Made by a program: the position numbers and the translations under genes. Of a DNA stretch of 64,000 nt, positions 9,216 to 13,359 are shown piece by piece (positions within the stretch are counted from its first letter, which is position 1; every line of letters starts with the position of its first letter). The stretch covers positions 19,650,182 to 19,714,181 of the forward strand of contig NC_052162.1 of the NCBI RefSeq assembly GCF_902713615.1, given 5' to 3'. Under the pieces are notes generated by a model that worked only from the letters and a program-made list of their open reading frames with translations, ran no database searches and was not told where the DNA came from. Origin of the DNA: Scyliorhinus canicula. Its lineage: Eukaryota.

Positions 9216-9925
9216 TGGCCGAGGGCTTCTGGTCCTGTGCAACCATATCCACTTCTGTGGCCTCATCGACCTGCTGGGTCACCTCAGTTTCTAGTGCCGG
9301 CTTGAAGGATGGAACTGGGATTGCCAGTTTCACCTCTTCTTGGCCGGCTGGAGCATCGGTGACTTGCTCCTCAAATCTGGAGATGACTATGCTTTCTGGC
9401 TCAGCTGGTCCAGGTACTGGGTGTTCTTGCTCAAACGCACAAATGTGCGACTGGTCTGTGGAGCTGCATAATGAGATAGTTGTCCTCAGTCAATGTCAGA
9501 GATGCCTATTATTGCAATCTCCACGACGCTGTAATAGCATCTTCGTCTATATTCGTCCCATTCGTCATCGGTATCATCGATGGCTTGGGAGTAAATTAAT
9601 GGAGTCATTTCAAGGACTTGTAATGGGTCACCACATACCTCCGAGGCCAGTTTTTCCAAGATTGGGACGACTACTTGCGTCTCTGGTTCAATCAATAGCT
9701 GATCTTCGGTTGCATCAGCAGCTTCAATTTCTGTGTGCGCCATCTCCAAACTCCCACTCTCTACAGAGACCAGCGCGGTCTGGGCGTCCCCCGTGATCAC
9801 ATGGTCATTGCTTGCAGACCCACGGAGCCGTGCTGCTGGAGCCTCATCTGTACTGCTGGAGAAGAGAAGTACAATCAGCTCACAGTGTTCGTCATCCGGC
9901 TCACCTTCCATGTCATCACTTTCTG

Positions 9926-10038
9926 AAAAATGAAATGAAAATCGCTTATTGTCACAAGTAGGCTTCAAATTAAGTTAATGTGAAAAGCCCCCAGTCGCCA
10001 CATTCCGGTGCCTGTTCGGGGAGGCTGGTACGGGAACC
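9926..10038 (-). mobile_element. 5'-truncated short tRNA-SINE (Rex1-like tail)
   Basis: Matches the 3' part of 13539-13713. Confidence 0.85.
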
Positions 10039-10039
10039 A

Positions 10040-10740
10040 TCACCTGCACCATCATCGACAACTTCAAGCAGATATTCATAGTAATCCTCCTCGGATTCAG
10101 CATCGTCGTCAGTCTTTTCACCTGAAAAATCTAACTTTGCATACGGAACAGAGCGGCAATTTCAAAATCATCCTTTTGATTGGCCGGCAGAGCTTGGCTT
10201 GAACTTCAGTGGGATAGTCTGAGGAAGTTGAAGAACGATTCATTTGATATGGTTCTTGTCGCTGTTTTTGGAGTGCTCCGACCCCGGTACTGTGGTTTTG
10301 TTCGAATTGTTCTTACTGTTACATTGTTGCCCTCCCTCCAGTCGATTGTGCAGCCGACGGTTTGTGGTTCAGCAAAGGACGATTTCAGCAGCCGTGAGTC
10401 TAACTTTAGTGATAACCTCATATTGTGAAATACTCATTAGGCCCAAATGTAAACTCGAGAGTGAAGCTCCACGGCTTTTTATTCTCTGTGCATTTAACAC
10501 TCACACCTCACAGATGCTGTAATACGGGTTCATCATGTTCTTGTATCGCCATTGATTCTGTGCGCGTTCTTCAAGACTGTTCACCAGAATCGTCGAATGC
10601 TCACAGGCAGTTCCGTCCCCTTGTCTGGTTTGTCGCCCTCCACTAGGATTTCTTCGAAATCCTCATACACCGTGCACACTGTAATGTCTTGCAGTGATTC
10701 ACTGAGCTCAGCTGACCAGCTATCTTCTAGATTTAGTCGC
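10040..10740 (-). pseudogene. NAP1L: Intronless NAP1-like (NAP1L1/NAP1L4 family) C-terminal histone-chaperone domain, decayed
   Basis: Colinear motifs SIRRFW*TVLKN, IQEHDEPVLQHL, PWSFTLEFTFGPNEYFT, EVITK, GCTIDWREGNNVTVRTIRTKPQYRGRSTPKTATRTISNESFFNF, DFEI, LDFSGEKTDDDAESEED match recalled NAP1L1 GIPEFWLTVFKN, VQEHDEPILKHL, PMSFVLEFHFEPNEYFT, EVLTK, IDWKKGKNVTLKTIKKKQKHKGRGTVRTVTKTVSNDSFFNF, DFEIG, LYFTGEAIEDDDDDY. Confidence 0.92.
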
Positions 10741-11184
10741 TTGACTAGATTCAGGAATTTGCCTGATTTTATCCCAAATACTGAGTCCCCATCCATGTCT
10801 ACAATGTGAAAGAGTATTGTGTGCTTCATGCCTGCCACTGAGGGAACCAGTTTGCAAACAGTGAAGGTCTCCAGAGTTTTGTGCCGCAGTCTATCATCAG
10901 CCCTGGCCAATCAGCAAAGTCTCGCTGCACGTTTAGCTTTTGCAAAGCCTGGCGACTCACGCGGTTACCTTCAACATTACCTTCGATTTGAGTACAGACG
11001 TAAAGGTTTTTGGAAATGTTCTTATCATCTTGATTCTTTGTTACTATTTTGGTTTCACCTTTGTTTCTCAGAGTTTACAGGTTTCTCGCCGCGATGAGAT
11101 CGATGAAAAGCTGTTCTTCAGTATTTATCTCATCTACTGCATGCACCGTTCGTGCACGGTCCACGGTGGAACACGCAAAACATT

Positions 11185-11817
11185 GGGTGGGATTCTCCAA
11201 TTGCCGACGCCGATATCGCATTCGGCGATTGGCTGGAGAATCCCTTTTGATGCCGAAATCAGGGGTGTCACCGTTTTTCAGGTGCTCCGCCTACTCCAAA
11301 ACGGTGTCATCGGCGAGTCCGCCGAACGCCGTTAGGACGGCCTCAGGACTTCACCTCAAGGCCCTCTCTCGATGCTCTGCCCTCGATGGGCCAACTTCCC
11401 AACGGCGTGGATCACTTGTGGTCTGACGTTTCGTCAACATCGCGTAGGGCCTGAAGACTGTGTCCAGCGCCACCACAGTTGGGGAGGAGGGGGGAGCCGT
11501 TCCCCTGGCCGGGGGGGCTTCGGTGGGGGCTGGGGGGGACTGGTAGGGATTGGTCCGGGAGTGGCAAGGGTGGGTTACAGGGGGCACGATCTGGCAGGCT
11601 GGCTCCGCATGCAACCGGCACCATGATGTCCAGCGCGTCCGCTGCAGATCGCCGCTATACGCATGCGCGGCCACAGACCCGGCAATTCTCCATCCGTATC
11701 TGCGGGCAAATACGGGGGTTTTACGTGACGTGGCTGCTCGCCCCACACTGGAGCGGCACCAACTTTTTGGTCGTAATACTAGACACATGCTCCGGATATA
11801 GCCTCAAAATCCTGCCC
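11185..11817. mobile_element. Harbinger MITE
   Basis: TIRs GGGTGGGATT...AATCCTGCCC with ATT TSD on both sides; removing it restores the gag CCHC knuckle. Confidence 0.9.
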
Positions 11818-12146
11818 ATTGTTTTGCAAAGTGCGCAACACGGCCACACCTGGAACAAACGTTTCCAAAGGCCTGACATTGCCCCAGGGCACATCGAGTG
11901 CCTCACTTTTGGCACAAGATGGCAGCGAAAGGCTCCTGTCGGCCGCTTAAAATGGCCGAGCGCACTGAGACCACATGACGTGCGTCACTGCACTAATGGC
12001 GCTATCTTTTTCTTCCATGTTGGCACCATAATCTTTTGAGCACTATGCACCTATTCTTTGTACAGCAATCTCGCTCACCTGGCAAATCTTCACTGCATTT
12101 TCCAGCACTAAATTTTCCTCCCACAAGAGTATCGCCCGAAGCTTAT

Positions 12147-12446
12147 GGGCAGCAGGGTAGCACAGTGGGTAGCACTGTGGCTTCACAGCGCCAGGGTCCC
12201 AGTTTCGATTCCCCGCTGGGTAACCGTCTGTGCGGAGTCTGCACGTTCTCCCCGTGTCTGCGTGGGTTTCCTCCGGGTGCTCCGGTTTCCTCCCACAGTC
12301 CAAAGATGTGCAGGTTAGGTGGATTGGCCATGATAAATTGCCCTTGGTGTCCAAACAGGTTAGGAGGGGTTATTGGGATGGCTTAAGGGGGCGATAAAGA
12401 CTCGATGGGCTGAATGGCCGCCTTCTGCAATGTATGTTCCATGTTC
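12147..12446 (+). mobile_element. HE1-like V-SINE
   Basis: Head, V core, CR1-type tail; CTTAT TSD. Confidence 0.9.
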
Positions 12447-13005
12447 TTATCATCAAGTAAACCAAAGACAATTTGGGCGCGGATTAACAAAGGTTCAGGT
12501 CACTGGAGTTGCATGACTGGGCCTTCATCCTCAAGTCCGTGACAAATCTATCAATTGATTCGCCAGGTCTCTGGGGACGCGTACGGAACAGATAGATTCA
12601 AACATTTCATTCTTCTTAGGGAAACAGTGCTTATCAAAGTGCTTCATCACTTCAGCAAAGTTCTTGTGGCCCCCCTCATTATCAAACACAAACAAGTTGT
12701 ACAGTTCGAGCGCTTGTGGACCTGCCACTGTTAGCAGCAACGCAATTTGCCTTTCATCAGGCTGGGCCTGTAGACCCACAGCCGAAACATAAAGTTCGAA
12801 CTGCTGTTTGAACAGCGCCAGTTCTCACCTACTTTCCCAGTTATCTGAAGTTGGTGGCGACCCTCAGTCCGTCCATCTCGAGCTTCAGCATATTTTTACG
12901 CGTCGGGTCGCCTCAAGCTGCAGTTCACCAGGCTGGTCTTCATGCTGAATGCCTAACATTGTCGCTGCCGATGCTGTCTTTAAATCTTCAGCACTCGTAG
13001 TACCA

Positions 13006-13359
13006 TATTGTGTTTGGTCCTTTGTACTTTATGAAGGAATCCACCAAACACTTTGGCTTGTCCAAACCAGAATCTTTCTCTGAGTCTCATGTGGTAAGGT
13101 AGCAATCTGATGCAGAGCGCATTATCATGGAGTCTGCTAACTACTCCTCTGGAACTGCACCTCACACTGAACAAGCATTCACATACATGTTTTATGACCC
13201 CCTCAATCCTCTTCTGAAGATGACCGGATGTGTCTCCCCTTATATTGGATTCACAGGTCACATAACCTCGGTCAAGTGTCCGCATGGTGTGCCTGTACCG
13301 CCACCTGCTGGTTGGAGGTCGCACACCTTCCAAGTATGATATAACCCATTAGCATATCA
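13006..13359 (-). repeat. 5' LTR of the NAP1-carrying element
   Basis: Minus strand begins TGATATG, has a TATA-like AATATAA and an ATAAA near the end, and abuts a TGG PBS-like site; boundaries approximate. Confidence 0.65.

What the first reader, a model, noticed from the sequence alone, without database searches (positions are those of the whole stretch)
9230..13359. LTR retroelement that has replaced RT/integrase with a captured NAP1 histone-chaperone domain
Seen in sequence: on the minus strand the order is LTR, PBS-like site, Gypsy gag with CCHC knuckle, protease-like region, then at least seven colinear intronless NAP1 motifs (10604 to 10040) and an acidic tail. ORF 10581-10910 runs without a break from the protease-like C-terminus (FHIVD...LNLVKRL) into NAP1-like sequence (ELSESLQD...SIRRFW), so the fusion is in frame. 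No RT, RNase H or integrase is visible. Established knowledge: NAP1 proteins are H2A-H2B chaperones, and vertebrate NAP1L1/L4 genes have introns and are highly conserved. Inference: the many conservative substitutions suggest the domain evolved as protein cargo of a non-autonomous gag-NAP1 family, perhaps handling histones on cDNA or at integration sites, or as a domesticated chimera. I do not know of a described Gypsy-NAP1 fusion. This copy is decayed (stops, frameshifts, SINE and MITE insertions).
Basis: partly seen in the sequence, partly recalled or inferred. Interest (0 to 1): 0.93.

Follow-up and report, generated by a model that had tools for sequence, protein, structure and literature searches.

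The report
Dead retrotransposon carrying a NAP1L1 fragment
This is an old, broken copy of a shark jumping gene whose front half (gag and protease) is joined in frame to the rear two thirds of a spliced copy of the host histone-chaperone gene NAP1L1; the captured piece looks like a decaying passenger, not working cargo.

Summary
The observation largely holds. On the minus strand, 10209-10570 matches the NAP domain (Pfam E 1.2e-11) and human NAP1L1 residues 184-301 (PDB E 1.3e-14). The match is colinear and has no introns. Upstream lies a retrotransposon gag. Removing a MITE (3-bp TSD) restores a perfect CCHC knuckle, and removing a SINE (5-bp TSD) restores a gag motif. One ORF (10584-10910) runs from the protease-like C-terminus to the NAP1L1 "EFW" motif, so the fusion is in frame.

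No RT, RNase H or integrase of the element is present. The two reverse transcriptases nearby belong to CR1/L2-type LINEs. The LTR is unverified, because the window holds no second copy.

The functional reading is not supported:
- The fragment lacks NAP1L1 residues 1 to about 168, which include the dimerisation helix.
- About 4 stops and 4 frameshifts in about 190 codons fit neutral decay at the observed 57% identity.
- No intact relative turned up in any protein search.

I could not test copy number myself, because the only read-laying run was lost to a filter. The scan has already noted the same architecture on other DNA of this genome (five notes, one followed up). Closest known kinds are maize Bs1 and gag-onc transducing retroviruses. 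I class it as a new member of a known kind, of moderate interest.

The parts
13004..13359 (-). Putative 5' LTR (TG...CA, with CCAAT/TATA-like CCAATATAAGGGG at 13236-13248). Unverified.
   Evidence: Read from the sequence. No second copy in the window by blastn with word 11 or word 7.
12991..13005 (-). PBS-like TGGTACTACGAGTGC, 3 nt after the putative LTR end
   Evidence: Sequence only. Not matched to any tRNA here.
11819..12891 (-). gag remnant, from ATG 12891 through the capsid-like motifs to the CCHC knuckle. It is interrupted by a SINE and carries stops and frameshifts.
   Evidence: Motifs W..W..F..Y, FRTRPQRPGESIDRFVTDLR and IVFGLLDDK|LRAILLWEENLVLENAVKICQ appear after SINE excision. ESM-atlas neighbours are Retrotrans_gag clusters at 0.91-0.93. 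No Pfam hit.
12142..12445 (-). Nested SINE insertion in gag, TSD ATAAG
   Evidence: At least 8 copies at 85-90% identity elsewhere in the window. Flanks shown.
11182..11817 (-). Nested MITE (TIR GGGCAGGATT.../...AATCCCACCC, TSD AAT) that splits the last Cys codon of the CCHC knuckle
   Evidence: Excision gives CSRCGRVAHFAKQC. Weak copy at 42562-42744. Pfam zf-CCHC_5 E 0.034 on the uninterrupted part.
10738..11181 (-). Linker and aspartic-protease-like region. It has IDCGT (10880-10894) where D[ST]G is expected, and the C-terminal motif FHIVD...FGIKSGKFLNLVKRL.
   Evidence: Motifs by eye. ESM-atlas neighbours of ORF 10584-10910 are RVP, RVP_2 and gag-asp_proteas clusters at 0.92. No Pfam or PDB hit.
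10590..10737 (-). About 48 codons of unassigned origin between the protease end and the NAP 'RFW' motif. The breakpoint lies somewhere in here.
   Evidence: Open and in frame. No NAP, protease or RT match at E<=10.
10114..10589 (-). NAP1L1-type fragment, about residues 169-345 of the 391 in human NAP1L1. It is colinear and intronless, with about 4 in-path stops and about 4 frameshifts.
   Evidence: Pfam NAP E 1.2e-11, 7.6e-05 and 0.12 on three pieces. PDB NAP1L1 E 1.3e-14, 0.001 and 0.22. Frames.
9915..10038 (-). 5'-truncated SINE copy inserted in the acidic tail (putative TSD GTGAT)
   Evidence: 93% identical to the 3' part of the full SINE at 13534-13720. Its excision joins the two frames.
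9200..10113 (-). Acidic tail and an unexplained open extension. About 185 codons are open after SINE excision, to the TGA at 9486-9488, followed by 112 more in another frame.
   Evidence: No match in Pfam, PDB, the protein collection or the ESM atlas.
8880..9199 (-). Second MITE of the same TIR type. It marks the last point to which the unit can be followed.
   Evidence: 73-76% copies at 3903-4200 and 53301-53563. The end ...GGAGAATCCCGCCC is shown.

Best explanation
This is a dead copy of a non-autonomous LTR-retrotransposon chimera. An LTR element of Ty3/Gypsy or BEL type lost everything after its protease. In that place it acquired the 3' two thirds of a spliced host NAP1L1-type mRNA, in the same orientation and reading frame.

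The most likely origin is a template switch of reverse transcriptase onto a co-packaged host mRNA, or read-through followed by recombination, as in gag-onc transducing retroviruses and maize Bs1. This step is inferred.

Such a chimera can only move by using the RT and integrase of an autonomous relative in trans. That is also inferred, and copy number was not tested here.

The NAP piece is a passenger. It lacks the dimerisation helix and has decayed at the neutral rate. After insertion, the copy was hit by two SINEs and one or two MITEs, and it lost or was cut off from its 3' end.
For: - The NAP domain and NAP1L1 matches are colinear, without introns, over 10114-10589.
- gag is confirmed by two motifs that are restored when nested TEs with clean TSDs are removed and by ESM neighbours.
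- The protease-like C-terminus and the first NAP motif share one frame in ORF 10584-10910.
- There is no poly(A) run or purine tract on the minus strand between 10700 and 8100. That argues against a LINE-made processed pseudogene.
- No element RT, RH or IN lies downstream. The neighbouring RTs are CR1/L2-type LINEs.
- Identity to human NAP1L1 is 53/93 (57%) over the alignable pieces. The neutral simulation predicts 3.4-4.4 stops per 190 codons at 53-65% identity, and about 4 are observed.
- Both the NAP/junction part and the tail share 5-9% of sampled 31-mers with a second species, so the unit is old.
- Lead only: five earlier scan notes on other pieces of this genome describe the same architecture. 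One follow-up reports spread to several chromosomes.
Against: - Only one locus was examined.
- No 3' LTR, PPT or element TSD was found, so I have not shown that the NAP piece lies inside an element.
- Same orientation and in-frame placement has a 1 in 6 chance for a random insertion.
- Pfam does not recognise the gag or the protease.
- No relative of any piece exists in the protein collections searched.
- The 31-mer shares in runs of the same species vary run by run, as expected for single-copy words. They give no sign of near-identical copies.
- The long open tail is unexplained.
Confidence: 0.62

Rival explanations
1. Chance juxtaposition at a single locus. A 5'-truncated NAP1L processed pseudogene landed in or next to an already dead LTR element, or the element landed in the pseudogene. 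Deletion then removed the element's 3' half and the pseudogene's poly(A).
For: - 5' truncation is typical of LINE-made retrocopies.
- LINEs are abundant around the locus.
- No 3' LTR shows that NAP lies inside the element.
- Sense orientation and in-frame placement is only a 1 in 6 coincidence.
- No relatives were found in the databases.
Against: - No poly(A) or A-rich remnant, and no TSD.
- It needs at least two extra events, an insertion and a precise loss of RT-IN.
- The local LINEs are of CR1/L2 type, which by established knowledge rarely make processed pseudogenes.
- Earlier scan notes report the same architecture at other loci. These are leads and were not tested here.
Confidence: 0.2
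2. One chimeric locus copied by segmental (DNA-level) duplication, not by retrotransposition. The copies elsewhere would then share flanks.
For: It would reconcile the reports of other loci with the lack of LTR pairs here.
Against: Nothing in this window suggests a duplicated block around the unit. The flanks are ordinary SINE and LINE insertions.
Confidence: 0.08
3. The gag-protease-NAP ORF was selected protein cargo that handled histones on cDNA or at integration sites, or a domesticated chimeric gene exists of which this is a dead paralogue.
For: - The junction is in frame.
- The retained part is the beta-rich half of the NAP domain.
- About 185 codons at the 3' end stay open after SINE excision.
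Against: - There is no dimerisation helix. The NAP match starts at profile position about 96 and residue about 169.
- The lesion load matches neutral decay.
- No intact homologue appears among 1.84 billion representatives.
- The tail is no better conserved in the second species than the broken NAP core.
- The ESM recognition value of the tail is far below that of real proteins.
Confidence: 0.06

Closest known systems
Maize Bs1 LTR retroelement (PMC13317346 and the references it cites: Jin & Bennetzen 1994; Elrouby & Bureau 2001, 2010)
   Same: It is a non-autonomous LTR element that keeps gag. It lacks its own RT and carries fragments of host genes derived from processed transcripts, joined into a hybrid reading frame.
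   Different: Bs1 is a plant element with three captured fragments (ATPase, xylanase, glucanase), both LTRs documented, and a chimeric product that is transcribed and translated. Here there is one NAP1L1 fragment in a cartilaginous-fish genome, a broken frame, one unverified LTR and no expression test.
Acutely transforming (transducing) retroviruses with gag-onc fusions, e.g. MC29 gag-myc and Abelson gag-abl (my own knowledge, not checked with tools)
   Same: An intronless host cDNA fragment replaces pol and env and is fused in frame to gag. The element is replication-defective and depends on a helper.
   Different: Those are infectious viruses whose cargo is selected for transformation. Here the element is an endogenous retrotransposon with a truncated, decaying cargo.
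Host NAP1L1/NAP1L4 (human NAP1L1 structures 11bc, 11bd, 7un3)
   Same: 57% identity over 93 alignable residues in colinear order, covering residues 184-301.
   Different: The fragment lacks residues 1 to about 168, which include the dimerisation helix. It has no introns, carries stops and frameshifts, and has no CKQQ end.
LINE-mediated processed pseudogene
   Same: It is an intronless, 5'-truncated copy of a host mRNA.
   Different: No poly(A) and no TSD were found, and it is joined in frame to a retrotransposon protease.

Membership tests
NAP domain (PF00956) | Sequence match above the Pfam gathering score | tested here: met
   44.9 bits against a 28.6 cut-off on 10209-10433. Two further colinear pieces fall below the cut-off. 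PDB NAP1L1 E 1.3e-14.
NAP domain (PF00956) | N-terminal long dimerisation helix (profile positions 1 to about 90) | tested here: not met
   The first match is at profile position 96 and NAP1L1 residue 184. ORF 10584-10910 upstream has no NAP match at E<=10.
NAP domain (PF00956) | Intact reading frame | tested here: not met
   About 4 stops and about 4 frameshifts over about 190 codons.
Ty3/Gypsy LTR retrotransposon | Two LTRs flanking the internal region | tested here: not met
   No second copy of 12940-13420 anywhere in the 64 kb.
Ty3/Gypsy LTR retrotransposon | gag with a CCHC zinc knuckle | tested here: met
   CSRCGRVAHFAKQC after MITE excision. ESM neighbours are Retrotrans_gag. Pfam gives only zf-CCHC_5 at E 0.034.
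Ty3/Gypsy LTR retrotransposon | Aspartic protease with a D[ST]G motif | tested here: inconclusive
   IDCGT at 10880-10894, plus a C-terminal motif and ESM neighbours RVP/RVP_2 at 0.92. No Pfam or PDB hit.
Ty3/Gypsy LTR retrotransposon | pol order RT-RNase H-integrase, which separates Gypsy from Copia and BEL | tested here: not met
   The domains are absent. The nearby RTs are of LINE type. The superfamily cannot be assigned.
LINE-mediated processed pseudogene | 3' poly(A) tract and flanking TSD | tested here: not met
   No 12-nt window with at least 10 A on the minus strand between 10700 and 8100.
Gene-transducing non-autonomous LTR retroelement (Bs1 type) | A host cDNA fragment inside the element that replaces pol | tested here: inconclusive
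   The 5' side is shown by the in-frame junction. The 3' side is not shown, because no PPT or 3' LTR was found.
Gene-transducing non-autonomous LTR retroelement (Bs1 type) | Several copies with the same junction at unrelated sites | not testable with these tools
   The only read-laying run was lost to a filter, and the genome itself cannot be searched. Earlier scan notes are leads only.

The most novel reading that the evidence does not exclude
The master copies of this family encoded an open gag-protease-NAP(beta half)-acidic-tail polyprotein. Its monomeric histone-binding module and long acidic tail were selected, for example to bind H2A-H2B at the preintegration complex or to target chromatin. 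Intact or domesticated copies may still exist in cartilaginous fishes.
Probability: 0.06. Interest if true: 0.8.

Novelty: new member of a known kind. Interest (0 to 1): 0.35.

Why it matters
Capture of host gene fragments by LTR retrotransposons is well documented in plants (Bs1) and in acutely transforming retroviruses. My three literature searches found no described retrotransposon-NAP1 chimera.

If the family is confirmed genome-wide, it would be a clean vertebrate example of retrotransposon-mediated transduction and amplification of a host cDNA. It could also serve as a marker for template-switch breakpoints and for the neutral decay rate of passengers in shark genomes.

It does not, on present evidence, reveal a new histone-handling mechanism.

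Tried and rejected
- **Read laying:** So there is no depth, variant or RNA evidence.
- **The search for homologous proteins:** The NAP piece, the 162-aa tail and the 97-aa gag piece gave no hits. The 0.55-1.75x length filter would hide full-length relatives in any case.
- **phmmer:** The junction ORF against 1.84 billion representatives gave 0 hits.
- **The look-up of encoding contigs:** Two ATG-started sub-ORFs are not on record.
- **BLASTP:** gag and protease pieces against the other LTR element in the window (36-41 kb) gave nothing significant. tblastn of all pieces against the window gave only self hits.
- **Pfam at E<=10:** No hit for gag, protease, junction or tail.
- **Rejected, the RT at 8111-6547 as the element's own RT displaced by a NAP insertion:** it is a CR1/L2-type LINE (FADDTK motif and a typical 3' tail). 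The same holds for 14063-15600 on the plus strand.
- **Rejected, 'LPEQAPECGDW' as the NAP1L1 C-terminal end (…NPAECKQQ):** it is SINE sequence that is also present at 13599-13700.
- **Rejected, the 93%-identical 106-bp direct repeats at 9928-10033 and 13534-13638 as element termini:** they are two copies of a common SINE, one full-length and one 5'-truncated.
- **The search of earlier findings by sequence and by relatives:** blank.
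Full report
**What is there**

All features below are on the minus strand.

Three stop-free pieces match the Pfam NAP domain in colinear order:
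- 10511-10570, profile positions 96-112
- 10421-10507, profile positions 116-141
- 10209-10433, profile positions 169-218, E 1.2e-11, 44.9 bits against a cut-off of 28.6

The same pieces align to human NAP1L1 residues 184-196, 199-225 and 246-301, with 53 of 93 residues identical. By eye the homology runs from RFW (10590-10598, NAP1L1 EFW at about 169-171) to RSVPYAKLDFSGEK and an acidic run (about 10114). That is about 565 bp with no interruption, and by established knowledge the vertebrate gene has many introns across this span. So the fragment comes from a spliced mRNA. The path needs about 4 in-frame stops and about 4 frameshifts.

**The retrotransposon part**

Pfam does not recognise gag or protease in this decayed copy. 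Two independent tests do.

First, the nested insertions have clean boundaries, and removing them restores canonical motifs:
- The MITE at 11182-11817 has TIRs GGGCAGGATT.../...AATCCCACCC and a TSD of AAT. It splits a Cys codon. Its removal gives CSRCGRVAHFAKQC, a perfect CX2CX4HX4C knuckle, preceded by the motif C.AFG..C.
- The SINE at 12142-12445 has a TSD of ATAAG and at least 8 copies in the window. Its removal joins IVFGLLDDK to LRAILLWEENLVLENAVKICQ.

Second, protein-language-model neighbours point the same way. For the 97-aa gag piece they are Retrotrans_gag clusters (0.91-0.93). For ORF 10584-10910 they are retroviral aspartyl-protease clusters (0.92). These are leads, not proof. The expected D[ST]G motif reads DCG (10880-10894).

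**The junction**

ORF 10584-10910 runs from the protease-like C-terminus (FHIVD...FGIKSGKFLNLVKRL) to SIRRFW. Its TGA replaces the Leu of EFWL, and TVLKN follows in the same frame. The fusion is therefore in frame in this copy.

The 48 codons between KRL and RFW match nothing. The breakpoint can only be placed between 10737 and 10590.

**What is missing**

- No second LTR copy exists in the window, so the LTR (13004-13359) and the PBS-like site (12991-13005) remain unverified.
- No RT, RH or IN of the element is present.
- The reverse transcriptases at 8111-6547 (-) and 14063-15600 (+) are CR1/L2-type LINEs, with FADDTK or FGDDTK motifs and typical C-terminal tails.
- No poly(A) or purine tract follows the NAP part.

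**Passenger or cargo**

- The fragment lacks NAP1L1 residues 1 to about 168. That region includes the long helix through which NAP proteins dimerise (established knowledge). A canonical chaperone fold is therefore unlikely.
- I simulated neutral substitution on codons drawn from this locus. It gives 3.4-4.4 stops per 190 codons (5-95% range 1-8) at 53-65% amino-acid identity. The observed values are about 4 stops at 57% identity to human NAP1L1. No phase of purifying selection after capture is needed. This test is rough, because the true ancestor is the shark gene, not the human one.
- phmmer of the junction ORF against 1.84 billion representatives, plus three word-index searches, found no relative.

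**An unexplained detail**

After removal of the SINE fragment at 9915-10038 (TSD GTGAT), one frame stays open for about 185 codons, from the last NAP motif to the TGA at 9486-9488. That is about 120 codons beyond where NAP1L1 ends, and another 112 open codons follow in a second frame. This tail matches nothing.

Its share of identical 31-mers in a second species is 0.07-0.09, the same as for the broken NAP/junction part at 0.05-0.07. So there is no sign of extra constraint on the tail. It may be 3'UTR that is open by chance, a second captured fragment, or sequence belonging to the element.

**Copy number**

This is the decisive point, and I could not test it. Shares of this copy's 31-mers vary run by run in the same species. 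That is what low-coverage sampling of single-copy words gives, and it is expected for an old, diverged copy.

The scan has met this architecture before on other DNA of the same genome: notes s1-195920, s1-213940, s1-223439, s1-223440 and s1-196009. The follow-up on s1-195920 concluded that it is a non-autonomous Gypsy-type element carrying a NAP1L1 mRNA fragment, that it has spread to several chromosomes, and that the captured piece is a decaying passenger.

These notes moved my reading from chance juxtaposition toward a family-level chimera. I treat them as leads. My confidence of 0.62 rests mainly on four results from this locus:
- the sense, in-frame junction
- the absence of poly(A) or TSD around the NAP block
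- the absence of any element pol remnant
- CR1/L2 LINEs being poor makers of processed pseudogenes (established knowledge)

**Comparison with known systems**

It works like maize Bs1, which has gag plus transduced host gene fragments and no RT (PMC13317346). It also works like gag-onc transducing retroviruses (my own knowledge). Membership of 'Gypsy' cannot be granted, because the defining pol order is absent. No paper linking NAP1 or NAP1L1 to a retrotransposon chimera was found.

**Verdict**

The chimera is real and decayed. It is probably one copy of a helper-dependent family, with the NAP fragment as a passenger. I class it as a new member of a known kind, of moderate interest (0.35).

Noticed in passing
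window 6547-8111 (-) and 14006-15601 (+): Two 5'-truncated copies of one CR1/L2-type LINE family (FADDTK/FGDDTK RT, with a conserved C-terminal ...RGHKFKV/RGHNLRLKG... tail). They lie in opposite orientation on either side of the chimera.
   Followed up: partly
window 13534-13720 (-), 9915-10038 (-), and partial copies at 490-543, 22863-22916 and 46863-46919: A tRNA-headed SINE family whose 3' tail is ...GGGGCTTTTCACAGTAACTTCATTG...GTGACAATAA.... The two copies flanking the chimera belong to a subfamily that lacks AGTGTTAATGT and ends in GCGATTTTCATTTCATTT.
   Followed up: partly
window 11182-11817, 8880-9199, 3903-4200, 42562-42744, 53301-53563: A MITE family with GGG(C/T)(A/G)GGATT(C/T)T-type terminal inverted repeats. 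The one cleanly bounded copy has a 3-bp TSD (AAT), which suggests a PIF/Harbinger-like origin.
   Followed up: partly
window 36105-40651 (+): A second, unrelated LTR element with a gag-like DUF7083 domain, an aspartic protease (PF13975, E 9.6e-11) and an integrase core (PF00665, E 5e-15). Its gag and protease show no detectable similarity to those of the chimera.
   Followed up: partly
window 9200-11100: Small runs labelled 'RNA?' or of unknown kind (X11, X12; X5, X10, X18, X29) hold 7-41% of this locus's sampled 31-mers. The decayed copy may be transcribed, for example within an intron or a non-coding RNA. I could not lay reads to check.
   Followed up: no
window 29332-29433: A run of 102 N (assembly gap or masked stretch). 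Left untouched.
   Followed up: no
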